A DNA stretch of 61,347 nucleotides, filler included, from Sluysia triapertura (Eukaryota): NCBI GenBank assembly GCA_046118255.1. It is 4 parts of 4 records of this genome, joined end to end, with 100 filler letters (N's around TTAATTAATTAA, not from the genome) between each part and the next. Parts side by side here need not be neighbours in the genome. Positions count along the whole stretch, not along the records: positions 34,922 to 50,262 come from JBJNIA010230900.1; 3 more parts are not named here. The stretch is one strand, 5' to 3'. Made by a program: the position numbers and the translations under genes. A model generated the notes under the pieces. That model saw only the letters and a program-made list of their open reading frames with translations. It did not search any database and was not told the DNA's origin. Of the stretch, positions 5,823 through 50,262 are shown in pieces (position 1 is the stretch's first letter; each line of letters starts with the position of its first letter).

Positions 5823-6479
5823 TTAATAATTAGTTGAATATTATATTCATTCCATTAAACTGAGTCTTTTTTAAAATTTCGTAGATATATAAAACCGATA
5901 GAAGTTCAAACCAATAAGAATTTCCCGTTCTACAGAAATAGAGATATTTGGTAAATTAGAGATATTTACTAATATTGATGTATTAGTAAAAAAATTTCAT
6001 ATAAAATGTCAATTTATTCAAATTAATTAATTGAAACGCAGTACTCTTATAACAAGTACTAAGTTTTTGTTATATGTCATTTAAATATTTAATTAAATAA
6101 AACTTAATAAAATAAAAAATACTTCAAAATGATTTTTGATTAAGTAAATAGGTATTGATTTTGATCAACATTCAGTTTATTATAGAAAAAAATATAAAGG
6201 AGTTTAAATGTTATTTAGAAAATTGATATTATTCAAATAATGACCTAGAATGAATGTATCGCCTATCACAAAAGATTCATTTCTACGGTTTACTTTTATC
6301 ATCTACATTTATTTGTTTATGATTGTTCGCACTTTTTGTGTAAGCATAAAGTGTTAAAATTTTTAATCATTTTAGATATGGATTTAGAAACTCGAATCTC
6401 TCATTCGTAATTATTATTCATCAAATAATAGTGCCAAAATTGTAATACACGGAAAAATAATAATGTACTCACAAAATGT

Positions 6480-34921: not shown

Positions 34922-35330
34922 TGGTTATAATTTGTCTTTAAAGAATAATTTACCTTTTTATAAAGAATAATTTGTATTGTTATTGTTATAAAGAATAACT
35001 TGTATTGTCATAATTTATATCTTCTAGTTGTAGTTTTGTGATAATATAACGAATATATCGAGATTTTGAGTTTATTTAGTTATTGAGTTATAATCTAATA
35101 ATCTGGGAAAATAAAAGTGATAAAAGACACAACAAAGGAAATACAGTAGGTCAGCTTCTAGCATAAGTTGTACATATTTACTTCTAGTAGTGCTTTTAGT
35201 TATTTTTTACAAATGACATTTTTTCATATTTTTTCTGTTGTATTGTTTTATTCTATTCCTTATTTATATAATATTTTTGTTTTTTTGTATAAAATAATCC
35301 TTTTAATTAACATTATTTTATTTTTTTTAT
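34922..35330 (-). repeat. 5' part of a further hairpin-array element copy, cut by the assembly gap
   Basis: Reverse complement tgtcttttatcacttttatt...aactcaataactaaataaactcaaaatctcgatatatt matches 13084-13158. Confidence 0.55.
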
Positions 35331-36391
35331 GTGTCAGTCGTAAAAATATATTTCTAGAGTACCAGTTCATACGATTCTCGAGAAAAAAAGAGCGAGCCCC
35401 TTGTTAAAAATTTTACAGCTTACCACTGATTATAAGTATTAAAAGAATACGTCATGTCAGATATCTTGATAATAAAAAATAGACTTCAAAGTAAAGATGA
35501 TCTATAGCCATCATGTATTAGAAATTTTATCTTTACTTAAATTGAGAAAAAGCTAAATAAAACATCTACAGACAGAGACATTCATAAACATAACGTAATA
35601 AGGTTTTTCAATAGTCGCCTTTGTTTTGTCTGCTGCGTATTGATTCTTAATTAAAATAATTTCTTCCTGATATTGCATTTTTCTATGTTTCTGGTTTAAG
35701 TTTTCACTTTCAATCAAAGTTTTATTGGTATCCTGGCCATTTTCTGAATGCAGATTTTGATCTTTTTTACATAAATTATATTAATTCAATGAGTTCAGAA
35801 AAACGTATATATCAAGTCATCGGAAGTTTCACTTGGAGGTTAAGATAAAGCTTCAAGTGCTCACCAAGAATGTTTTGCGGAGAATTAATAGGTTAGACGA
35901 ACAGGAACTCTATTGACAATGTGTTTCAAATTATATTAGGTTATTCCCACGATGAGATAATAATAAACACTTTACGAATACTCTTTGGATGGCATGAATA
36001 TATATTAACTTTAATAAGTACCAATTTAATTTAGTCTGTTTCATCTGACATTTCGTTCGAGGAAAACAGACTATGAAACTTTTGTACCCTATTCCCCCAA
36101 AGTCGATTGTATGCGTTCTGCCTCAGATATTACTAGTTAGTACTAGATTAAAGTATACTATCTTCTTACCTAGCTTTTACTTTAGATAAATAACTGCCTT
36201 CTTATTTTTTTATTTATCTTTCTGAGTTTCGTGCGGTCCCAACTTATATTCCAGCAAGTAAATCTATTCCTCGACCAGATGCCAAACCCTTCATCCGACG
36301 TGAGTGGTTCTCTGCAGTGTATTCATCGAAAATTCTCATCTAAAACAGTCGATTTGGATAAAAATGATAACGGTAACTGATAAATATTTAT

Positions 36392-37696
36392 TGTTGGGAT
36401 TACTCAGCTGGTGAATGGAAAAGAATGAATGAAATGTGAAATTGGAGAATAGAACATTATAAATAATGTTAGAGTAAGAATGATGAAGATGGAAACAATT
36501 ATGGTTATTTTAACAGCTGAAGAATACCTTTGAGTTTCAAAGACCTTCATGGGGTATTGAGACCTTGTGGAAGTTTGAGATTGGTTTGGAAAACCTTTGA
36601 ATTTGTGAACCTTTAGATCATTTAAGACCTTATTAATCTTCAATCTCTCGATAAGTATTTAAGACCTTTGAGTAAACTTATAAATTAGCTGACATCTATA
36701 AGATACTTGAGAAATAAAATCATTGTTGCTAATATCAAAGATAAGTTTGATATGGTATAATCAATATAAATAAGTAGAAAAAAGGAATCAGAGCATTGAA
36801 GATGAAAACATCTAAAGCCTCCTGAATGCCTTAATAAAACGTTTAAACATAAAATAAAATTAAGTCTAAAAATCTTAATTAAGAAAAAGTACGTTTTTGT
36901 GAATAACATTGAATGCTGACTGCTATATTAAATTTAATACTCTGCATTCATTTATTTTAAAGACCTTTCCATGAAGCTATAGTTTGACTGAGTTCATGAA
37001 AAGAAAGCCTTAATATTGAGCAAAATCAAATTTTAATTAATTCTTAATTATGGAATGTTAAGGTGCAGGCCTACAAGTGCCATTTGGAATAAAGATAGTA
37101 TAATTCACTATAATAATCTAAAATTGGTAGAAGAGGCTGATGGCTCAGTGAAGTAAGAGGGTCCGGGTTCGAATCCCGGCCAGTCCATTTACTGAAGTCT
37201 AACACTTAGAATGAGGAAAAGATAATAAATTGAAAATGAGATGATTGCTATGAAAAAGGAGAATCTAAAGGTAAGCTTGAAATGTCTGTAGAGTGGTTTG
37301 GAAATACCAACCTCAGGTGTGAAAAACTTAAAATCAAATAAATTAAAACTAAAATTAAATTCATAATTTTTGTGTCTGTTAGCAATATTGGTGATTGTTA
37401 CTTTGATGTGAGAAGTAATTTAAGTAAAAATAGATCGAGTAGAGTAAAAGAAAATAATAGATGATCATAAATCAATTTTCTTCGTTCCATACTTGGAAAA
37501 GTTTGACAGATAGTACCGCGTCAAAGTTATTATTAATTCCTAAATAATGTTGCGATTATTTGTATGAGAGTGTTTGACTGTAAAACTCAAAATGTATAAA
37601 AAGAAATACTTAAGAATTTTAAGTCAGAAGAAAACAATAAGCAATGAGAAGATCAATGTCAGACAAAATTCGTGAAGATTCATGCCTGTGATAACA
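36392..37696. repeat. Solo-LTR-like dispersed repeat, family A copy 2, carrying a nested tRNA-core element
   Basis: TGTT...AACA termini; colinear with 32211-33475. Confidence 0.75.
37056..37204 (+). mobile_element. tRNA-derived repeat copy inserted in repeat family A
   Basis: tgttaaggtgcaggcc...ggctgatggctcagtg...gggttcgaatcccggccagtcca...gaagtctaaca; absent from the paralogous site at about 32910. Confidence 0.8.
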
Positions 37697-38502
37697 TTTT
37701 TGTTTATTATTAATTTACCTTTTTTGGGCTTATAATATTTATTTATTTTTTGGGAATACCACTTGTTTTTTTTAAAAATCACTTTTTTGGGAATTCTATC
37801 TCGTTAAAGATTATTTTTAGGAGAATTACCATTTTTGTTCAATAAAAATTATTTTTTGGGAGTTCTACTTTAATAATAGATTTTAAGAACCCTCCTGGAA
37901 AATAGGAATTAAATAGCGCACCCTTGGTTGCTGTAAATTTTGTTAATTATCATATGATTTATTGAGAGCTAATAATTTTTCATTGGGTATTTAGTAAATT
38001 TTTTGCTAGTTTTAATAATAACTTACTGTTGGATTTTTCATTAGTTTGAATACATTTGAAGTTATATCTTTTTGATTTAAATAAGTATCATTGTAAAAAT
38101 AAAAACTGAGTGTAGCAATTTGTATTTGATTTTGTAATTATTAAATTATTGAGTTATTGTTATTAATTTAAATTGAATGACGCGACATTTTGGTTTCAAT
38201 AAATATCATTGTTAAAATGAGAAAAATTGTGATAATTTTTATTTGATTTTGTAATTATTAAATTTATTGAAATTCTCCAAACTAAATCGATTTGTTACTT
38301 CTTTTTGTCACTAATATTATCATTATGTACATAATTATTAATGTAATTATATTGACATACTTTTCATTTTATTATTATTGTCTCTATTATTTTGACAAAT
38401 TTTAAATTTGTGGACAAGAAATTTCTGGTTGGAGGAGACCTCTTAAAATATAATAAAAATAAAACAAATAAATTAATTATAACAATAAAATGATAATAAT
38501 AG

Positions 38503-39145
38503 TGTGGTGGCCAACCTATTACTTTTAATAAATTTTATTAAAATTTTTCGTTGGAACACAACAAAACCATATTCACTTTCAAAATCCACAATCTACATTT
38601 TAAAAACTAATAAAAACATTTTTATACATAGATTCATATCAACATAATCAAAATCATGTTTTTCAATATCGCATATTTTTAGAATGCGCCAAAATCTAAA
38701 CTGTAATTTATCTTCTTTACATCCACTAAACCACACTCTTTTCAATATATTTGCAAGTCACAGTCTTCTAAAGTCCAAACTTTATCTTATTCAAAAACAG
38801 CAAATAATATTTAAAAATTCACATAAAATACTTTCAGTTCTTACCTTACAACATTAAAATTATTATCAAGTTTATATTTCTTTAACCTTTATTTATCCGG
38901 AGAGTTTCAAATATGTTGAGATTAAATACAAGAATTAGAAAGAAAGTTTGTGTTAAATTTCAAAAGGTTTATGTATTTTAGATATTTTTATTACTTTTAT
39001 TATTATTATTTTATCCATTTATTTATTTTAATCATTATTATTGTTTTATCACCTTTATCTATCAAATCATACCCTGTCACCAGTCCACAGTTTGATTTAC
39101 ATACATTTTGACATTCATCAGGAACAGTGAACTGTTGACAGTTGC
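38503..39145. repeat. Dispersed repeat family B copy 1
   Basis: Starts TGTGGTGGCCAACC and ends in the ctgtcaccagtc...aactgt...gacagtt inverted repeat, as does 47165-48100. Confidence 0.6.
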
Positions 39146-39149
39146 AAAG

Positions 39150-39870
39150 AAATTTTCACCTAACTTACGATGCAAATAGTAACCTGGAGAGAGTTCGCCT
39201 AACGGAAAACGGCTTAAGTCTGAACGACGGCGGTTTGTTAGGATGTAAATAGAAAAAATTCACTTAGGAAGAGTCACGTATCGGTTATTGGCTTGAGATA
39301 AGGAGTATCTACGAAGAATCTAGAGTTATTTTAATACTTTTAATTATATGTAATTTAAATGATTTTTAGTTAGCATTTTTACGGTCTAACTTTAGTAAAA
39401 TAAGATATTAAATTAGCCGGTTACGGTCTAATTGTTGAAAGCTTCTGATATTATTTTATGATCTTAAGCTAGCCTTATTACGGTCTAGCGTTTAATTATG
39501 ATTTTGTTTTTAAGTAATAATAGTCTGAAGTTTTATTATTCAAAGATATGACTTATACACAAAATAGATACAAGGCGTATGTAATAATGATAGTGATTTT
39601 AAGATACTTAAATTCGATTTAATGAATTTAGTATGATGATTTTGACTTATACGTATTACGGTATAAGCAAAACTATAAAAAGATTTTGAGTCTGAATTTA
39701 CTTCTCCCTTTTACGGTGAGAAGATGAAAAAACTTACAATTAAAAATCTTACTTTCATGGAAAATTAATCTGCGTCCTTTTGAATGAAATTTTCTTGCAA
39801 CTGACTGGTAGAAATTCTGCAAAAGTCACTAACTTAAATACAGAATTTCTAACCGCCATATTGCGGTGTT
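39150..39870 (+). repeat. Hairpin-array element, copy 3 (diverged sequence, same architecture)
   Basis: Leader hairpin 39198-39242; TTACGGT-containing hairpins at 39368, 39411, 39468, 39646, 39701. Confidence 0.75.
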
Positions 39871-40554
39871 TATTAAATTTAAATAATTGTTCTATTAAAA
39901 CAAAATATATTAATTTAGTTTAATAAAACAAAATTTGGACAATTTTAATTTTTTAATTATGATTATTTTCCATTTAATTTTAATTTCGATTTTAATTTTA
40001 ATTTTTTAAATCTTCCTTCATTTTTTATAATAATAATAAGTATTTTTATTAAATAAAATAAACAATCATTAAATAATTATAGTTAACAAACAAATAATGA
40101 ATGAAATAAGTTATCAAATAATATAATCAAAATAGTGTTTGTTTTCAATCCAATCCTCACAGTATTGTGAATGGAAAGGAACATTTGCATTCCGTAATGA
40201 ATCGAAGTTTGTAAAATAAATAAACTCTGCTGTTTTCTTTCTAAATATGAACAAGCAAATATTGTTACAAAATTCTTTTGTGTTCGACCGAAGTTCGTGG
40301 TTTATATTCGTAGAAAATACTGCTTCAGGATTCTTAGCACAATAAAATTATTTTGTAGATATCGGATTCTGAACTCCTATATTAATGCTATAAATGTGGG
40401 TGCAATTATAAATTTTCAAAAAATATCGAGTGTTTATACAATTACAAAGAACTCTAATTATGTGTATTTTAATCTAAGACAAATAAGTTAGCTCACTATA
40501 AAATCACGTAATTAAAACAAAATATATAAATTTTATTCATACAATATTTAATAT

Positions 40555-40595
<41 letters not shown>
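40555..40595. repeat. (AAT)n microsatellite
   Basis: Direct reading. Confidence 0.9.
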
Positions 40596-40596
<1 letters not shown>

Positions 40597-42959
40597 GATT
40601 ACTCTTAATATGAATAATTTTAAAATTTAACGTTGTGCCACGAGTAATTCTTGGCTTAAAAAATTATTAGAATTTAAGCGTGTAAAATCGAGTAAAACTT
40701 CACATTATAGACAACAAAATTCGGTAGTTTAAAGCATGTGCCATTGCCAAATAATCTACAATTGATACTTGAAAAATAATATTGTACTTATGTAAAAAGC
40801 TGACTTATACCAAATTTATCTTACTTTTTATTGTACGATTCCATTCCACATTAATTATCTGCCTATGTCAACATTATAATTATTTTGCTTTACTGTAATT
40901 AAGTCAGAAATAGTCGTTTGTTTTAGATTGTCGTACATAATGAGAACAAGTCATTCTTATTATTTCTAATACGAAATCGCGCCTTATAGTTTTAGTTGAG
41001 TATAAAATTTTTCTGCACATTATTAGTAGTCATTGTTTGTATCGATCAGTTAGTTAGATGTAATATAGGTCAAATTTGTACGACATAATTTTTAATTTGT
41101 CATATGATAATTATTATATGATAAAATTGGTATTGGTTTATTTGATGAGATTTTGAAATACGAAGTACATAATTTGGTGCACTATCATATTGTATAGATA
41201 TGACGTCAAACAGAATAATTCGATTGTGTCTGTAAAAGATTATTCTAAAATTTTAAAGTATTTAATAATTAAAAACAGAGAAGTTGATATATTTTGACGA
41301 AAACTAAAAATGAGATTGAAAATTTACAAAATTGTCAGTCATTTAAATTACAAAATCAACAGCAAACTTTCTTCGAATCATGTCAAAAGTAAGACAAAAC
41401 CTTATCATGTCATAGATTATTGTTCATTAGTTTGCATGTTCAACTATTACGTCACTTTATCAAGTTTCAAGTGTTTTGGGCTGAAATGCAAAACGATGGC
41501 TTTGTAGGCATAATTCAAAAAATTATTAACAGAAGTTCGTGTTTTAAAAAATTCTTTTTGAAGATGTAACGATGGAAGTTTTGACGTTTCATACTTCACG
41601 TTACAATCATTTTGAACAGATAGAAAATCAAATATTTGAATCCATGAGAAAGAATAAAGATGTCCAACGTACGACTTAGATCGCTTAAACTGGAATTTTC
41701 GATATTTGGCGTAAAATTATTGAAGATATGATAATAGGAAGTGGTATTGCTTCCACAATTGTTCCTTATTTTAAAGGAACCAATTTTATAGTCGCTTGTT
41801 CACCCAATAATTAAGCACCTTTGGCATTCCAAATGTCTTTGTTAAATCTGGTTTAGAAATAAACGATCAAGACGATGATGAAAATTTCTATGTAATAAGG
41901 AAGGTGGCGGTGTTTGTAAATGAGCTATATGCCGAAACAGTGCCTCGTGCAATTAAAGATGAACCTACACTCGTAGAATTAGATCACGGTGACGATTCGA
42001 GTCGTGTTCTGAACGATATGGAGCGACATTTCTCAAGGCATGTGATCTTAGGTTTTGTTTTATATCTAAAAGATAAGGTGTTGCTTTTAAACTCAACATA
42101 TGCAGGTTGTTCACGTCTTAATTTTTGGATAAATTTTTGTGATACATTTTAAAGTTGCGTATTTATATGCTTTTAACAAAATTTAATAAAAATATGATTA
42201 ATAATTTTGATAACATAACCAATTAAACATTCTGAAGGACCTTAAGTCCTTTTTGAATTTTAATTTTAAATTTTCTAATAAATCTGACTTCTCTCGGCTA
42301 TTACAATAATATCTCCAAATATTCGGTTCCCAATCACTATTTTTCCGCGTAACGTAAATTTTATAAAATCCATACAGACGTAATAAAATATCGATAAAAT
42401 TATATTTTTCAAATTAAGAAAGTTTAAAGTTTTGGTTTCGAGATAAAATTCAAATCAATAAAATAATAAAATTAACAGACTTTTTTAACCATAATTTTCA
42501 ATTGTTACATAATTTTTAAACTAAAAAAATATGTAAGAATACAATACAAAAAGATACAACAAGTAAAATTCGTAACTAATTAAAGTATTATAATTTGTAA
42601 TCGTAATTAATTAATAAAATATTTTGTAAAAGAAATATAAAATATTATTTTTGAATTCCACAATCCATTAAGAAAATTAAATTTTAATAGATTGAAATTA
42701 TATTAACGGAAAATATTATATTTGTAATTCCATTAATCCATTAAGATAATGGATTTCTGTAATAAATTGATCGAAATTAATGTAAATATTTTACTTATTA
42801 GTCAAATAAAACTAGTTTAATATTAATGGATCATTAATGGAATTAATAAAATTAAATATTGGCTAAAGGAATGGTATATAAAAATTTGCTAAACTCACAA
42901 CAAACTTCACAAGATAGACAAATAGACAGACGACATCGGTAAACAATTATAATCAAACT

Positions 42960-43700
42960 TAGAGTATGTAAAGGTGTAAAAATTTTAGTTATATTTTTAT
43001 TTGAATTACATTTAAAAATTTTTTAAAATATAAAAAATTATTATTAAAAAAATTATAAATTAAAAAATTTTAAAAGAAGGCTCAAGAACAAAGAAATGTT
43101 TTATCGAAGTAAATTTCAAAAATATGTCTTTATGTATATAAAAAGAACACAAAGAAGAAGAATCCATAATTAAAATTTTTACTTCAGTCACAATTAATTC
43201 GTCAGCAACTCAATTACGCCATTTACATCACTAATTCGAAAATTAGCAATTTCTGACATCAATACTTGATTGTTTCGGTACTCCAGCAATTATCAAATTT
43301 ATCAGTCAATCTATCAGGGTTATATCCCGCGTCTACGATTAGAGGGATAACAATTTCTAATCATCAGCAGTTCAATCTATCAACTACTTTGAGAAAAATT
43401 TCTAGAACTTAATCTTCGATTTTATTAATTGAATTTGTAAGTTTGTTCTGTATAGTTTGAACACTCAATTGCAGTTACAATATCTACATAAAATATCAAA
43501 TTTTCTGTTGGTCCTTAAGACAAATCATAAAATCATTCTAAACTCTAATTTCACCGCTTTTTAGTTGGCCCTTAAGGTCAATTATAAAATCTGTATAAAT
43601 AGGTAGAATCTTCGGATTAGATCTTTATTATAAGTAATTTGATATTATTATTATACTTGCTCTTATTTAAAATTAAATTATTTGTGTTTACATTTTTTAT
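42960..43700 (+). repeat. Dispersed repeat family C (TATA-led, hairpin-containing); an inverted copy lies at about 14387-14900
   Basis: Shared atgtcttta...tatataaa...ccataatta...caattaat...cgccattt...cgattagagg between 43125-43345 and the reverse complement of 14415-14670. Confidence 0.6.
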
Positions 43701-44856
43701 AAATTTATAGTGGTTTTATCTTGATTTAATTAAAATTCATTAGATATGTTGTATAATAAAATTTAAACTTATTGAGTCTTATTTTATTATAATTTTTCTT
43801 ACGTTGATATTGTAACATAAGACAAGCTTATACTCTTCATATTCCGGTCAATTTATAGTTAAATACATTTTTCAGTCGAAAGTACTTTGATTATAATATA
43901 AACTCATTAAATTTTCATAGGAATCAAAAATCTAACGATCATTATATTAAGATTTAAGAGTTAAAGATATAAAAAAAACGATACGTTTCTATACAAATAT
44001 TGTCAACTTTATTTTTACACTAACTCAAATATTACATTAGCCAGCGTAGGTCGCGATTAAATAATATTTAATATTTAATATCAGTCGATATAACCGACAA
44101 TTTTATCCATTATTGTTTAAGTTAAGGTGAAGAGTAGTTTTATACAATTAGTTTTTTCAAAGTGTTCTCATTATTAATTATACTGTAAACTGATTCAGAA
44201 TAATAATTTATTTTGCTGCAAGTTAAGCTCTTTATTAAGAAAAAACCCAGAAAGTATAACGATAATACCATCAATTTTCAAAATCCGCGAAGACATTAAA
44301 TTTTAATTAAAGGAATTCAATCAAAGATTTACATTTTGTATCAAGTAGTAAGTTTGTTTGTCTTAGGGTTCTTCTCAATTTTCACGGGAGTCATAAAATC
44401 ATAAATAGACTTTCGTTTAATAACAGTTGGTCCTAGACCAATTATAAAATCATTATCAAAATCAATTATTAGAAGAAAATATAGCCTCTACAACTTAATT
44501 ACGTCCATATGATACTTTGATTTGAATATTCTGACATTATTGGATATTTTTGGAATATTTTAGTAATTGTAATTAAGTTTTTTATTCATTGTATTAATAA
44601 ACATTAGTGTAGTTTAGAAGTGTTTTTATATATTAAGGAGCATTAATTAAGAAGATAAATTAAGTAATTGTTCATGCAGTACAAGAGGCATAGAATTATA
44701 TAAAATGAAAAAACTATTAAGAAAAGACCTTCGTTTTATAAAAAGTTATAATAGTTATCGATTTTATCCTAAGTATACCTCAATATGCACTACAGACGAA
44801 CCCATTATAGAATAAGACATTTTGCAGAGTTTAGGATTAAGAAACGCAGTAAATTT

Positions 44857-46330
44857 TGACACCCGAATTGGGACTAACAACATTAAATATTACATATAGT
44901 TTAGATGTAGTGATTAAGAAGTCATTAATCTTCTAGGTAAGCATTAATATGAAAACTATAAGTTAAGATTAAGTAAGTTATTAAAGCATTAAGGATAAAT
45001 AGTAAAGAAAATAGAAGCGGTCTTATAAGACATTTCCTAGCTGAAAATATTGATAATATTAAAAAGAAAACTAAGAAAGTCAAAATGGCATTACCAGTTG
45101 AAGATTTTAAAACTTATGACTCAACCGACCCACAGTATTAATCCCATTGTTATCCTTTCAGAAATGTGCAAATCTAATGTAGTAGAAGAATAACTTTGTG
45201 ACTCTTTATCTGAATACAACAGCATAGCAGAGGCTAATGGCTGGTCGGAAATAGAAATAAAAATTAAAAGAATTCAGAATTATTTGACAGGCGTCGCCAT
45301 ACTGACATATAAAGAGATAGACCATCCAAAGAAAAATAAATGTAATTCGTAAACGCTTTCACTGAAGAGATTGTCTTAGATGACATAGGAAAATACTATA
45401 CAAAAATGCCCAATATAAGAAACCAGAAACTTCTTGAAACCGTATGTGAGTATACATGTGCACTCAAGAGTTAAGTGACATGAGCCAAAATTCCAGATGA
45501 AAGAAAAGAAATGACTCTAATAGATAAGTTTAAGAGCGGACTACGTCCTGAATTAAGAATTTATGTTAATTTGATATAATCAATGTTTTAAAGAAATATT
45601 CAAAAAATTAAGAGAGATAGAGAAATCCAGGACCGATGAAAAAGATAATATAAGTTATATAAGTAATAATAAGAGAGGTAGGAGCCCAGGATATGATCTA
45701 AGAGAGATGCATTCAAACGTAGGATTTTTTCAGATAATAACAGTATAAATAATTTTGGAGGAAACAATTATCGAAGCAATAATTCTAACCTAAGAAGAAA
45801 TGATTATAACCAAAAAAAGAGGAAAGTTAAGAGGATTTGAAAGGAGTTATCAGAATATTGGAATAAGAGCATTTAAGCAAAGACCTCGATCTTGATGGCC
45901 GAATAATGAAGAATTTATAAGTAGGAGTAAGAGTCCAGGAAGAGTTAACAATTATAATGATAAAATTAATGGCTGACGTAGAAAGAGAAGTAACATGTCA
46001 TAATTGTGCTAGGCAGAGACACTACACACGAAACTATAAGAAATTGAAATTAGATATTTTAACCAATAATTAAGTAGGATGCAAAGTTACCAACCATTAA
46101 GGGGGCAAACTCCGATAAGAAAGGTAAGATTTCATAAGAAAAATGATAGAGCACAAGTAAATTATAATTATGAAAGACAAGAACAAGGCGATTATGTCAG
46201 TTATGGGGAAAATATATGGAAGAAGAAACTAAAGTACTGCAAGAATTTCACTGGATGAAATTGGATGACGATGATAACGAGAAAAGAAAAAATATATCAA
46301 AGAGGAAACAAGAAGATTAATAAATTATTT
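44857..46330 (+). mobile_element. gag: Ty3/Gypsy-type LTR retrotransposon remnant: primer-binding site and gag pseudogene
   Basis: PBS-like TGACACCCGAATTGGGAC (44857-44874); ATG 45085; YNSIAEANGWSE...IQNYLTGVAILTYKE, RNQKLLETVCEY, DKFKSGLRPELR; zinc knuckle CHNCARQRHYTRNY at about 45996. Confidence 0.8.
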
Positions 46331-47164
46331 ATATGAACGTTTATTTCAATTTTCTAAAGAAAAAGGAAGAAAAAAAAACAAGAAATAAGAACACAAAAAG
46401 ATGTAAGTGAAGTAGAAGAAAATAAGAAAGTGGAAGAAATTTTGGAAGGATGGAATAAAAATAAAAATAATACTTACCAAGAATTGATTAAGGACGAAAA
46501 TGAAACCAACGAAAACGAATAAATAAATCTAACTGAAGAGATAAAGAAGGATAAAATAAAAATAACCAAAAAGAAGGCAATTTGAGTGAATGCGAAATAA
46601 TAATTTCAGCCAATGAAATAAAATTAAGAAAAAGGCAGATCCTCATTTAGAATATTAATTAAAGAACAGTTTTTGCATCAAGATTAGGGAAAGCTTAACT
46701 TCATAAACTAACTAATAAAACCTGGAATGTCTTTGCATATAAACCGTTGATTTCAGGCGAACCCTTATAACTTAATCACATTTGCTATATTCAAGGAGAA
46801 ATAGCAGTAATCTGAAGGTTACAGTTCGTTCGTCTCTGATGTAAAAGATTGAAGTCCAATCTTATCTAACAAGTTCGAAATTCAAATTATGTCCTCTTGT
46901 TCAAAATAGAATAAACTAGATTGACTAGAAATTATTTATTAAATGGACAAATGTTTAGTGGAACAATTATAAAACAGTTTATCAAATAGAAAAATACTTT
47001 AGATGATAAAATACAAAGATAAACACAAAAATGTAATAATGAATACCACACGTAATTATTTTATATAAACTTTAAAATTATAAAATTATTACATTAAATA
47101 TTATTCTGATACCAATATTACAATACAGTTGATATTTAATGTGAACTTGTTGTTAGATCAAATA

Positions 47165-48100
47165 TGTGGTGGCCAACCCAATAATTCGAAATTTTATTCC
47201 AATATTTCACAACTTTTCATAACTCATAATAACTCCAAACATTCTAGACATAAAATTCATAACATCAAATTCACATTCAATAACGAAAATCTTCAAAGAT
47301 CTACAAAAATTAATTCAAAATATTGCAAACTTTATTCTTACCTTCTCAAAACATTTTTTAATTTATAACTTTATATCATTAAAATTACATTCATTTTTAG
47401 ATTAACAACATACATTTAAAAATTCATTAGAAACATTTTTATGCATTATTTAATAACATTAAAATCACAATTACACCGTAAATCATCAAACACATATCTC
47501 AATTTCAATCCAAAACATTTCATCTTTTCAATCTTTTAACATTCAGTCTCTAATATCGTCGAAAAACACTAACCTAAAACTTTTAAACTATTTTTAAACA
47601 TTACAATCAAAATGACATTCCTTCAACATCTTTAGTTATGTATGAATATCTCTAAACAATCCTCTATCAATTCTTTCAATTCTATATCGGTAATCACTAA
47701 ATAAAATCTCTTTTAAAGTATAAAATCAGAATATATCTTTTAAAAGCTTTCAAAGATGAAAAGAACATCATTAACATAACTTCAATTATTTATATTTTAA
47801 CTAAAGAATGTTATTTAGAAATATTTTAATTTTTTAAGAAAAGATCGTGTTATGAATAAAATAAATAAACAATTTATGTATTTTCGTTGATTTTAGTGTT
47901 ATTATTAATTCATTTGGTATAATTATCATTATTATTTTATTTTAATCAATAATGATAATCATTTTCATTATCACTACTTTAATGCGGTATCAAAATCAAT
48001 TACATTGCACATATGTATCTTTTTAATCATACTGTCACCAGTCGACAGTTTAATTTAAAACATTTTAACATACCTTATGAACTGTCGACTGATGACAGTT
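47165..48100. repeat. Dispersed repeat family B copy 2
   Basis: Starts TGTGGTGGCCAACC; ends with a 20-bp inverted repeat (48031-48050 / 48080-48099). Confidence 0.6.
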
Positions 48101-49130
48101 AATTACATTCAATGTACTTATGGCATGCATGCATGCTCGTAATTCTTACTCATTAAATATAGCAATTGATTGAACGTCCAATCATCATTAATAAAAAATA
48201 GTATTATTTATTTGTAGATTTCGATTTTTGATACATTAGAAAACCAGAAATAGAAAAATTAACAACTGATTTTATTAAATTTTTTTCTCCAGTATTGATT
48301 GTCAAATTTATACAATTGGAAAGATTGAGTAAATTAAAATTCCTTTCACATGAGATGTCTACAATAACACGAAATTTATCAAAATTTGGTCAATTTTTTT
48401 TATTTGAACAGTAAGACTACGTTAAGCTTAGCAAAGTTGAAATTCAATTTATATTCAATGTGTCAATTTATGTTAATGAAATCAGTGATGAAAGTACACC
48501 AGAAGAATTTTTAGATTGTAATCCAGTTCTATGTTTAGTTTCCTTAAGAAACTTTCTGAACATGATCGTTGCTATGATCTTAAAGTCTCGCCAAAGTTTC
48601 GTAGAGGCAGATCAATTAATATGGTATCATTTCCTATCCTTATGAACGGAGTATTTCACTAATATTGTAATTCTTATGGAACTGGAATCGTTGACAAAGA
48701 TTTTGTTGTTAACAATAAGAAAATATTAATTCGAATTAATATTGAAATTGAACAAGATGCAAGTACTGTTTAAAAGTTTATTTAAATTATTTATCTAATT
48801 CAGAATTACCTAATGACTTTAATAGTCTAAAGCATCTTATGTCACTTAATATCAATAAACATCATGTAATAATAAAAAAAATGTTGTATAATTTATAATG
48901 TGTTGAATTACCTGAAATTATATAAAACGTTAGTGTGTAAATTCAACTTTGAACAAATTAAAATGATTTACTGTAATGGCCGGGTAATAAAATGATATAG
49001 AAGGGCTTTTACATATATTATTTGAAAATTATGATAAGTGGACTTAAGGTCTTTTTCGTTGTTAAAGTTAAACCGATTCATATTGAGGAAATTTGGCTTA
49101 AGGCCTTTGCTACTGTGGTAATATTGTGAT

Positions 49131-49649
49131 TTAAATGGGTGAAATACGACAAAAATAATAAGATCTAGAGATATATTGAGAAAAACACCTAAAATCACCA
49201 CACGTTTTTAAATTTAAAATAATTTCAGGATGAATAATGATAAAACAAATAAAAATTTTAGTGAGGACTAATAATAATACAAAAGAGTTATAACCGTGTC
49301 TTTGATGAAGAATTATTGGAATACCTTGAACTTCGCGATGCGTTTTAAATTGACTATACAGGTTTAGGCTTAAGACAGTCATTTTAAGCATCTTCGTGAC
49401 ATAGATTGTAACGTTTATTTCCAACTTCCTGAACGTTTTCGTAAAATTCATTTCCGTATCTTGAGTTACATCAGGATGGTAAAGTTTTGTTTTTTGAAAG
49501 TAAGCTTCTTTAATTTCTTTATTTGATGCGTTAGAACTGACATCTAATCATTCATATAAATTAAATTGATCTTGTGATTTCATCTTAATACGAGCGGATA
49601 CGTTTTTATGCATATAATTAAGTTGGTTGGTACGAAAAGATATTTTCAT
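49131..49649 (-). pseudogene. J-domain (DnaJ/Hsp40 type C, DNAJC30/DNAJC4-like) pseudogene
   Basis: NLYE*LDVSSNASNKEIKEAYFQKTKLYHPDV: HPD at 49470-49478, in-frame TGA at 49548-49550; downstream hydrophobic segment. Confidence 0.7.
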
Positions 49650-50262
49650 TAGAAATCAAAAAATTTGCCAAAATTTTACATATTATTAAAACAAATTACC
49701 TAAAAGTGAATAATTAAACTCGAATAAAATAATAATATAACTCAAATGTAAGATTTAAAATGAAACTGAAACTTAGACATTCAAACTATGATAAGTTCCG
49801 AAGATAAATATAATAATATTGGATATTGAAAGTATTTCAAAATATTTCAATAGTCAACGAAAATTTCTTTAAAAATACTGTAAGAAAAGAAGAAAAGAAG
49901 ATGAGAAATTGTAGCATACTTAATTATTAAGAAGAAAATGTTATAGTTATTGTAATACAATCTTGAAAAATTTTGGCATGAAATATCTTTCGTTTATTGA
50001 ATTTGAAACATCTTGAAATTGTTGTAATAATAATATATCGTCTATTTAAATTCCATTTTGCAAATCATTTGTAAACTCTACTTCCAAAAGTTTCTTAAAA
50101 TTAGTTTGTGCAGTTTTATAAGAATCGTTCTCCATGAATGTTTCTGCCAAATAAAGTAATACTACATCCGTTCAAAAATGATTGTCTTTTTGGTGAGAAG
50201 CTTTGTTGAAAAGTGATTGTCTTGTCCGTTTTATGCTTCGTCGCTTTAATTAACTCTGAACA

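What the first reader, a model, noticed from the sequence alone, without database searches (positions are those of the whole stretch)
39198..39870. Array of hairpins with a constant TTACGG-T core and bulged T but a different stem in every unit
Seen: five units share only the core, yet each has its own complementary stem: AGTTAG-CATTTTTACGG-T-CTAACT (39368-39391), AATTAG-CCGGTTACGG-T-CTAATT (39411-39433), GCTAG-CCTTATTACGG-T-CTAGC (39468-39489), CTTATAC-GTATTACG-GTATAAG (39646-39667) and CTTCTC-CCTTTTACGG-T-GAGAAG (39701-39723). A sixth, ACCGC-CATATT-GCGGT, is at 39852. Units are separated by unique AT-rich spacers and preceded by a long CCTAAC...GTTAGG hairpin (39198-39242). Inference: changing the stem while keeping pairing, loop and bulge points to selection on a folded RNA or ssDNA structure. 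It could be a repeated protein-binding, packaging or nicking signal, analogous to MS2 operator arrays, integron attC extrahelical bases or HUH nick-site hairpins. No coding sequence is associated, so a non-autonomous structured mobile element or ncRNA is the leading guess. I do not recognise it as a described family.
Basis: partly seen in the sequence, partly recalled or inferred. Interest (0 to 1): 0.85.

Follow-up and report, generated by a model that had tools for sequence, protein, structure and literature searches.

The report
Array of covarying bulged hairpins, unknown family
Five copies of a 33-base unit in AT-rich non-coding eukaryote-like DNA keep the same loop (TTACGGT) but pair through different stems, which points to selection on a folded single strand (probably a protein-binding RNA platform), but it matches no described family and I could test neither its expression nor its spread in the genome.

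Summary
TTACGGT occurs five times on the + strand within 340 nt. Each copy sits in a perfect 5-7 bp hairpin, where chance gives about 0.07 per site. The five are paralogous 33-nt units: ATGATnTTn, a 6-nt arm, CC, a loop ending in TTAC, GG, an unpaired T, then the complementary arm. A covariance model built from four units found the fifth. It found nothing else in the 15-kb piece.

The stems covary. Six of 8 pairs carry double changes (9 cells), with no one-sided change, and 0 of 500 shuffles reach this.

A 19-20 nt imperfect inverted repeat (39138-39157 / 39785-39803) brackets the array. It closes the predicted fold on both strands.

Rfam, plasmid, phage and metagenome searches gave no relative. 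No RNA data were available. The surroundings hold only decayed gene fragments.

Best reading (about 0.4): a multivalent array of hairpins that bind a protein in single-stranded form, built like the transferrin-receptor IREs, roX stem-loops or CsrB. Main rival (about 0.3): the core of a non-autonomous, inverted-repeat-bounded mobile element. Membership of roX, IRE, attC, CRESS/HUH origins, C/D snoRNAs or Ac/Ds was tested and not met.

The parts
39138..39157 (+). Left arm of the imperfect inverted repeat that brackets the module (starts CAGTTGCAAAG...)
   Evidence: Local alignment with the reverse complement of 39785-39803 gives 18 of 19 aligned bases matching, with one 1-nt gap. p=0.0015 against shuffles; 3% of real background windows score as well. 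It forms the closing helix in the MFE and centroid folds of both strands.
39198..39242 (+). Imperfect hairpin CCTAAC...GTTAGG rich in ACGG motifs (TAACGG, AAACGG, GACGG)
   Evidence: Read. Three of the 13 + strand ACGG sites of the piece lie here. The region's fold is not better than shuffles.
39359..39391 (+). Unit U1: ATGATTTTT / AGTTAG / CATTTTTACGG-T / CTAACT
   Evidence: Model score 47.2 bits. RNA fold -3.2 kcal/mol, marginal.
39402..39433 (+). Unit U2: AAGATATTA / AATTAG / CCGGTTACGG-T / CTAATT
   Evidence: Model score 42.3 bits. RNA fold -8.3 kcal/mol.
39458..39490 (+). Unit U3: ATGATCTTA / (A)GCTAG / CCTTATTACGG-T / CTAGC(G)
   Evidence: Model score 47.6 bits. RNA fold -8.6 kcal/mol.
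39498..39531 (+). Possible decayed unit: ATGATTTTG is kept, the core and the hairpin are lost
   Evidence: Weak model hit of 8.5 bits, E=5.8. About 58% identity to the unit consensus by eye. No hairpin. Not significant on its own.
39586..39620 (+). Possible second decayed unit (ATGATAGTGATTTTAAG...)
   Evidence: Weak model hit of 8.2 bits, E=6.6. Direct-repeat family D12. Not significant on its own.
39636..39672 (+). Unit U4: ATGATTTTG / A / CTTATAC / GTATTACG / GTATAAG / CAAAA, a 12-bp helix with a bulged A
   Evidence: Model score 43.7 bits. RNA fold -11 kcal/mol, z = -3.3.
39692..39723 (+). Unit U5: CTGAATTTA / CTTCTC / CCTTTTACGG-T / GAGAAG
   Evidence: Found by a model built without it: 19.7 bits, E=0.024 in 11 kb and 0.00087 in 401 nt. 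RNA fold -10.6 kcal/mol, z = -3.4.
39785..39803 (+). Right arm of the bracketing inverted repeat (...GAAATTTTCTTGCAACTG)
39809..39867 (+). Two further hairpins just outside the bracket: an 11-bp stem (39809-39851) and ACCGC-CATATT-GCGGT (39852-39867)
   Evidence: Fold -19.3 kcal/mol, z = -3.55. The unit model does not recognise them.

Best explanation
The feature is a degenerate head-to-tail array of a 33-nt unit. There are five intact units and perhaps two decayed ones. The array lies inside a ~666-nt non-coding module (39138-39803) closed by an imperfect inverted repeat.

In single-stranded form each unit makes a short hairpin. A variable 5-7 bp lower stem carries two C-G pairs and an unpaired U on the 3' side. 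These present a U/A-rich 6-7 nt loop ending in UUAC. A constant single-stranded AUGAUnUU lies 4 nt upstream.

Most likely the module is transcribed and the hairpins act together as repeated binding sites for one protein that reads both sequence and structure. That would be a multivalent platform or sponge, built like the five IREs of the transferrin-receptor 3' UTR, the tandem roX stem-loops or CsrB.

Shown here: the units, their common strand, the covariation and the bracket. Inferred: that the molecule is RNA rather than single-stranded DNA, that + is the acting strand, and that a protein partner exists.
For: - The motif is clustered and always lies in a hairpin.
- The units are paralogous with sharp boundaries, while the spacers are unalignable.
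- A model built from four units recovers the fifth in register and nothing else in 15 kb.
- Six of 8 pairs carry compensated double changes (9 cells), with no one-sided change. 90% of cells pair against 66% in shuffles, 0 of 500 shuffles reach this, and slid controls collapse to 25-51%.
- The loop core is invariant while the stems change.
- All units lie on one strand, and there is no CCGT in the region.
- The whole module folds better than shuffles: z = -3.3 on + and -3.5 on -. The five hairpins and the closing helix appear in both the MFE and the centroid structure.
- There is no ORF or protein domain over it.
Against: - There is no expression evidence.
- Only one locus was seen, with no orthologue, so all covariation is among paralogues of one array.
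- The hairpins are weak (-3 to -11 kcal/mol), and U1 is marginal.
- Every stem pair is Watson-Crick with no G-U. That gives no strand call and fits DNA-level pairing equally well. The DNA-parameter fold also has z = -2.5.
- One or two units look decayed.
- The neighbourhood holds broken gene fragments and a retroelement relic, which looks more like junk DNA than a conserved gene.
- Template switching during replication can create and re-perfect hairpins without selection (PMC8794818).
Confidence: 0.4

Rival explanations
1. The module 39138-39803 is a non-autonomous DNA transposon (MITE-like, possibly hAT-like). The hairpin units are its internal or subterminal repeats, shaped by selection in the active element, for example as transposase-binding sites. 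They now sit as an inert insertion.
For: - An imperfect 19-20 nt terminal inverted repeat starts with CAG and brackets the array exactly.
- The 8 nt outside each arm match at 5 of 8 positions, ACTGTTGA against ACTGGTAG (read).
- ACGG-type motifs cluster strongly, 8 of 13 in 500 nt. They include TAACGGAAAACGG, which recalls the AAACGG transposase-binding hexamers in the ~200-bp subterminal regions of Ac/Ds (PMC3260210).
- The surroundings hold broken gene fragments and a gag-like relic.
Against: - 3% of real background windows show an inverted repeat this good.
- A 5 of 8 flank match is expected about 6% of the time.
- All motifs point the same way. They are not inverted at the two ends as in Ac/Ds.
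- General TIR/TSD scans found nothing convincing.
- No transposase remnant was found.
- No second copy lies in the 15 kb.
- If the target-site duplication has really decayed at 3 of 8 positions, the 29 perfect stem pairs should have decayed too.
Confidence: 0.3
2. It is a neutral, decaying minisatellite. Its unit happens to contain a quasi-palindrome. The stems are re-perfected by template-switch mutation or intrastrand repair, and neither the host nor an element gains any function from it.
For: - The arrangement is head-to-tail, with irregular spacing of 43, 56, 178 and 56 nt.
- One or two apparently decayed units lie in the long gap.
- Template switching is documented to create and maintain hairpins, producing several compensating changes in one event (PMC8794818).
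Against: - The 33-nt units are 83% identical with sharp edges, while the spacers are unalignable. Neutral decay should be uniform.
- The asymmetric loop core is invariant in all five units.
- U5 differs from U1 at 5 of 6 stem pairs yet keeps the same geometry. Template switching alone does not predict that.
Confidence: 0.12
3. The hairpins act in single-stranded DNA as nick or origin sites for an HUH-type Rep or transposase. This is the design of CRESS virus origins, IS200/IS605 ends or Helitron hairpins.
For: - The loops are 11-12 nt and end in ...TATTAC or ...TTTTAC. U4 has GTATTAC and U3 has TTATTAC, which recalls the NANTATTAC nonanucleotide.
- All stem pairs are Watson-Crick, and the DNA-parameter fold has z = -2.5.
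- There is an unpaired T, as in IS608 hairpins.
Against: - Only TTAC is constant. The conserved GGT is foreign to the nonanucleotide.
- The stems are short and AT-rich rather than GC-rich.
- Five sites sit in a row.
- None of the ORF pieces scanned matched a Rep, helicase or TnpA domain.
- There is no match in phage or plasmid collections.
Confidence: 0.06
4. It is a cluster of separate small RNA genes, such as box C/D-like snoRNAs. AUGAU(GA) would be the C box and the nearby CUGA the D box.
For: A perfect UGAUGA lies before U4. CUGA lies 15-35 nt after U2, U3 and U4.
Against: - No complementary terminal stem lies next to the boxes.
- The C box is imperfect in four of five units.
- Unit spacings of 43-56 nt are too short.
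- The conserved hairpin would occupy the guide region.
- Rfam gives no snoRNA hit even at E<=1.
Confidence: 0.04

Closest known systems
Iron-responsive elements in the transferrin receptor 3' UTR (established knowledge)
   Same: Several hairpins within a few hundred nt of AU-rich untranslated RNA. Each has a constant loop and a constant unpaired base but its own stem sequence. They act together as binding sites for one protein.
   Different: An IRE has a CAGUGN loop, a 5-bp upper stem and a bulged C on the 5' side. Here the loop ends in UUAC, the upper stem is 2 bp (CC/GG) and the unpaired U is on the 3' side. No mRNA or transcript is known for this locus.
roX1/roX2 tandem stem-loops with roX boxes (Drosophila dosage compensation; PMC7528653)
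   Same: U/A-rich non-coding RNA with several tandem stem-loops carrying a short conserved U-rich box. The roX2 SL7 box GUUUUACG shares UUACG with the core here. Three units match the consensus I recall, GUUNUACG, at 7 of 8 positions.
   Different: No unit matches 8 of 8. The box here lies in the loop and the 3' junction, not base-paired in the 3' strand of a long stem. The invariant GGU extension is not part of the roX box. The organism is unknown, the DNA is far more AT-rich than Drosophila, and no roX-neighbour genes were seen.
CsrB/RsmZ-type protein-sponge RNAs (bacteria; established knowledge)
   Same: Many short hairpins with different stems present the same loop motif to titrate one protein.
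   Different: Those are bacterial, with a GGA loop motif, and are small defined sRNA genes with a promoter and terminator. None of that was shown here.
Ac/Ds (hAT) subterminal transposase-binding repeats (PMC3260210)
   Same: A dense cluster of short ACGG-containing motifs lies within a few hundred bp next to a terminal inverted repeat that begins CAG. A possible 8-bp flanking duplication is present.
   Different: In Ac/Ds the motifs are not embedded in covarying hairpins and lie inverted at the two ends. Here all point one way, the duplication matches only 5 of 8, and no other copy or transposase was seen.
CRESS-DNA virus or nanovirus origin stem-loop; IS200/IS605 subterminal hairpins
   Same: A hairpin with an 11-12 nt loop ending in ...TTAC and an unpaired T.
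   Different: There is no NANTATTAC consensus, no GC-rich stem, no Rep or TnpA gene, and five copies lie in tandem.

Membership tests
roX RNA | roX box GUUNUACG (GUUUUACG in roX2 SL7) | tested here: not met
   The units read UUUUUACG, CGGUUACG, UUAUUACG, GUAUUACG and CUUUUACG. The best match is 7 of 8; none matches fully. The box sequence is from PMC7528653; the N-containing consensus is from memory.
roX RNA | The box is base-paired in the 3' strand of a long stem, opposite an inverted box | tested here: not met
   The core lies in the loop or at the loop-stem junction of 5-7 bp hairpins.
roX RNA | Drosophilid host, X-linked, conserved neighbouring genes | not testable with these tools
   The organism is coded. 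The neighbours seen are a TPR plus DnaJ fragment and unassigned ORF pieces.
Iron-responsive element | CAGUGN loop on a 5-bp upper stem with a 5' bulged C | tested here: not met
   The loops end in UUAC, the upper stem is 2 bp, and the unpaired base is a 3' U. Rfam, which includes the IRE families, gave no hit.
Integron attC | R''/R' core sites (RYYYAAC ... GTTRRRY), extrahelical bases, gene cassettes, an integrase | tested here: not met
   The units lack the core sites. Only the separate 39198-39242 hairpin has GCCTAAC...GTTAGGA. There are no cassette ORFs.
CRESS/geminivirus-type Rep origin | NANTATTAC nonanucleotide in the loop of a GC-rich stem, iterons, an adjacent Rep gene | tested here: not met
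   Only TTAC is invariant. The stems are AT-rich. None of the ORF pieces scanned matched a Rep domain.
Box C/D snoRNA cluster | C box RUGAUGA, D box CUGA, adjacent terminal stem, guide complementarity | tested here: not met
   A perfect C box occurs only at U4. No adjacent terminal stem is present. Rfam gave no hit. Guide complementarity was not testable without the organism's rRNA.
hAT-type MITE (Ac/Ds-like) | Terminal inverted repeats (YARNG...) flanked by an 8-bp target-site duplication | tested here: inconclusive
   An inverted repeat is present and starts CAGTT (3% of real background windows score as well). The flanking 8-mers match at 5 of 8.
hAT-type MITE (Ac/Ds-like) | Subterminal motif clusters in inverted orientation at both ends | tested here: not met
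   All 8 ACGG sites lie on the + strand, and there is no CCGT in the module.
hAT-type MITE (Ac/Ds-like) | Many dispersed copies in the genome | not testable with these tools
   Only the 15-kb piece is available, and it holds no second copy.
MS2/PP7-type coat-protein operator array | ANYA (MS2) or AUAUGG (PP7) loop with a 5' bulged A | tested here: not met
   The loop sequences differ. On the - strand the architecture is similar (a 5' bulged A, 2 bp, then a GUAA... loop) but the sequence is not. There is no vector or phage match.

The most novel reading that the evidence does not exclude
An undescribed eukaryotic RNA (or single-stranded DNA) module. A ~0.67-kb stem-closed scaffold displays at least five copies of a new bulged hairpin motif: stem / CC / U-rich loop ending in UUAC / GG / unpaired U, with an AUGAU flank. 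It would recruit or titrate a specific, still unknown protein. That would make it a new family of multivalent hairpin-array non-coding RNA, or a new kind of hairpin-recognised mobile element.
Probability: 0.2. Interest if true: 0.75.

Novelty: new variant of a known kind. Interest (0 to 1): 0.45.

Why it matters
Arrays of hairpins with a constant loop and freely varying stems mark a few well-understood regulatory RNAs: the transferrin-receptor IREs, roX and CsrB. In each, a protein reads the loop and the stem is only scaffolding. A new motif with the same design, clean covariation and no match to any Rfam family would give a ready-made bait for finding its binding protein. If copies are dispersed, it would also give a handle on a new type of structured non-autonomous element. 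If it proves to be a single decaying minisatellite, its interest is limited to showing how hairpins can persist in junk DNA.

Tried and rejected
- Rfam at E<=1 over the whole piece gave only a 17-nt tRNA-like T-arm at 37163. ARAGORN found no tRNA.
- Sequencing runs: one DNA contig run holds 37% of the sampled words, and none is on record as RNA.
The model, Pfam and BLAST calls were run beside them. Only local scripts touched them.
They are nearly all plain tandem repeats. None resembles this array except the bacterial L086.
- Plasmid and phage collections gave no match.
- Full-text paper searches for UUACGG stem-loops and for hairpin arrays gave nothing relevant.
- Organism and neighbour genes: the 113-aa ORF has no homologue. 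The Atlas gave only weak TRAPP and CCHC leads. The exact-protein look-up found nothing. The Pfam scans gave only the DnaJ match; the TPR hits were weak (E about 0.1) and searches gave nothing useful.
- Alternative genetic codes: the ciliate code gives long ORFs in every frame, so it is uninformative. The DnaJ fragment also has an in-frame TGA and a frameshift, so I read it as a pseudogene or assembly error.
- Self-BLAST of the piece gave only low-identity AT-rich matches.
- General TIR/TSD scans gave nothing convincing except the bracket reported above.
- Strand assignment from G-U pairs failed. All core stem pairs are Watson-Crick; the only wobble is in the U5 extension.
- The better z-score of the - strand (-4.5, against -1.3 on +) reflects the weaker-folding C/A-rich shuffles of that strand. 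It is not evidence for the acting strand.

Full report
**Setting**

The piece (34922-50262) has about 25% G+C. Under the standard code it holds only two ORFs of 80 aa or more, no tRNA and no Rfam family even at E<=1.

What can be recognised around the finding is broken.
- On the - strand there is a TPR piece (weak Pfam hits only, E about 0.1) followed by a DnaJ J-domain, an arrangement like DNAJC7 or DNAJC3 (from memory). It lies at about 49340-50171. It carries an in-frame TGA, an in-frame TAA and a frameshift within about 70 codons.
- ORF pieces at 41548-42149 have stops and a frame change. They have no homologue, and only a weak TRAPP lead from the Atlas.
- A degenerate CCHC knuckle lies in a purine-rich stretch.
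- A tRNA-like T-arm lies at 37163.

I read this as non-coding DNA of a eukaryote with introns and retroelement relics. The organism is coded. Only one low-share DNA run holds the region, and no RNA run does.

**Checking the observation**

TTACGGT occurs at 39379, 39421, 39478, 39656 and 39711, all on the + strand. One unrelated copy lies at 47475 on the - strand. The window has 6 matches against 1.03 expected, and no shuffle reaches 6.

The copy at 47475 has no such stem. The same generous geometry applied at every position of the piece gives a stem of 5 bp or more at 7.2% of sites and 6 bp or more at 2.5%. Five out of five is therefore far beyond chance, on the order of 1e-6 or less.

ACGG as such is also clustered. 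Eight of its 13 + strand sites in the piece lie in 39202-39713, and the region has no CCGT at all.

**What the units are**

U1-U4 align over 33 columns at 83% mean identity. The consensus reads ATGATTTTA, AGTTAG, CC, TTATTAC, GG, T, CTAACT.

The spacers are 10-23 nt long, plus one long gap. They do not align, and Tandem Repeats Finder reports no array.

A covariance model built from U1-U4 with the bulged-hairpin structure recovered U5 in register at 19.7 bits (E=0.024 in 11 kb). The next hit reached only 14 bits at E about 0.4. No further copy appeared on either strand of the piece.

Two weak hits in the 178-nt gap between U3 and U4 keep the ATGATTTT flank but have lost both core and hairpin. 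They may be decayed units. On their own they are not significant.

**Covariation**

The test used the model-guided alignment of the five units.
- 90% of stem cells form standard pairs, against 66% after shuffling partners.
- Six of 8 pairs have changes on both sides, in 9 cells.
- No pair varies on one side only.
- 0 of 500 shuffles reach the observed covariation score.
- Sliding the 3' partners by 1-3 columns drops pairing to 25-51%.

The double changes are private to single units: one in U2, one in U3, two in U4 and five in U5. They are therefore separate events. The loop core TTACGGT is invariant.

All core stem pairs are Watson-Crick. This gives no hint of the acting strand and is equally compatible with RNA and DNA pairing.

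As RNA the single hairpins are modest, from -3.2 kcal/mol (U1) to -11 kcal/mol (U4 with its extension).

- The unpaired T between the GG and the 3' arm holds for U2, U3 and U5. In U1 only one upper pair can form.
- U4 prefers another register: a 7-bp stem and 8-nt loop, extended by five more pairs with a bulged A.
- The hairpin at 39852 is real but is not a unit.
- The upstream CCTAAC...GTTAGG hairpin is imperfect, and its region folds no better than shuffles.

**A boundary**

An imperfect inverted repeat, 39138-39157 against 39785-39803, brackets the GC-richer leader and the array. Of 19 aligned bases 18 match, with one 1-nt gap, and the repeat starts CAGTTGCAA. Significance is p=0.0015 against shuffles, but 3% of equally spaced real windows of the piece do as well.

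It forms the closing helix in both the MFE and the centroid fold on both strands. The 683-nt segment folds better than shuffles, with z = -3.3 on + and -3.5 on -, from only 20 shuffles.

The 8 nt outside the arms match at 5 of 8 positions, which is not significant. General TIR/TSD scans found nothing else.

**Search for relatives**
- Plasmid and phage collections gave nothing.
- A metagenome scan for three spaced TTACGGT returned 120 loci, nearly all simple tandem repeats without hairpins.
- The exception is L086, a gene-dense bacterial contig. Three 35-nt units in an intergenic leader carry TTACGGT between differing short stems. I treat this as an unrelated curiosity.
- Paper searches for the motif gave nothing relevant.
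I did not send those letters to any search tool afterwards.

**Interpretation**

The contrast between conserved 33-nt units and unalignable spacers argues that the hairpin and its loop have been kept by selection acting on a single strand. So do the invariant asymmetric loop, the nine compensated changes without a single uncompensated one, and the common orientation.

The design is the one known from multivalent protein-binding RNAs: a constant loop and unpaired base on interchangeable stems, repeated several times in AU-rich sequence. My best reading is therefore a transcribed, stem-closed module whose hairpins bind one protein (confidence about 0.4).

I cannot separate a host non-coding RNA or UTR element from the core of a non-autonomous mobile element (about 0.3).
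- For the mobile-element reading: the bracket, the CAG start, and the Ac/Ds-like ACGG cluster (PMC3260210) are suggestive.
- Against it: the motifs are not inverted at the two ends, the flanking duplication is poor, no transposase remnant was found, and there is no second copy in the piece.

A neutral minisatellite kept palindromic by template switching (PMC8794818) remains possible (about 0.12). It does not explain the sharp unit edges or the invariant loop.

Two further readings fail their defining features and are minor: single-stranded DNA sites for an HUH enzyme, and a snoRNA-like gene cluster.

The resemblance of the core to the roX box (GUUUUACG, PMC7528653) is limited to UUACG. It occurs in a different structural context, so I do not file the array as roX.

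**Verdict**

This is a real, statistically solid, covarying hairpin array of an undescribed sequence family. Its design principle is known, but its function and molecule are unproven. The evidence is limited to one locus, with no expression or comparative data.

Noticed in passing
window 49340-50171 (- strand): A TPR piece (50049-50171, weak Pfam hits only) is followed about 500 nt downstream by a DnaJ J-domain, an arrangement like DNAJC7 or DNAJC3. The J-domain has an in-frame TGA (49548-49550), an in-frame TAA and a 1-nt frameshift after HPD. It is either a pseudogene or the product of assembly errors. The gene runs off the piece's edge.
   Followed up: partly
window 41548-42149 (+ strand): Three protein-like ORF pieces are interrupted by two stops and a frame change. 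They have no sequence homologue and no Pfam hit. The Atlas gives only a weak TRAPP-domain lead (0.82).
   Followed up: partly
window 44900-46900 (+ strand): A purine-rich stretch with strong positive GC and AT skew contains a degenerate CCHC zinc-knuckle piece (45921-46070). It is probably a decayed retroelement gag.
   Followed up: partly
window 37120-37190: A tRNA-like fragment (GGCTCAGTG...GGTCCGGGTTCGAATCCCGGCC) has a perfect T-arm but no anticodon arm. ARAGORN does not call it. It is possibly a tRNA-derived SINE remnant.
   Followed up: no
window 39074-39141: A local inverted repeat with 19-nt arms (84% complementary, 30-nt loop) lies just upstream of the bracketed module.
   Followed up: no
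L086, about 5947-6079 (- strand of the locus): On a bacterial metagenome contig, the leader of a 146-aa gene holds three ~35-nt units after a terminator-like hairpin. Each has a constant ..GCATTAAAT.. flank and TTACGGT between short stems that differ (TCACC/GGTGA, CTTC/GAAG, CCGAC/GTCGG). It shares the 'constant loop, variable stem' logic and the same heptamer, but is probably unrelated.
   Followed up: partly
It was left out of all later searches.
   Followed up: no
window 40555-40600: A long TAT/ATA microsatellite, which reads as a poly-Tyr or poly-Ile run in translation.
   Followed up: no
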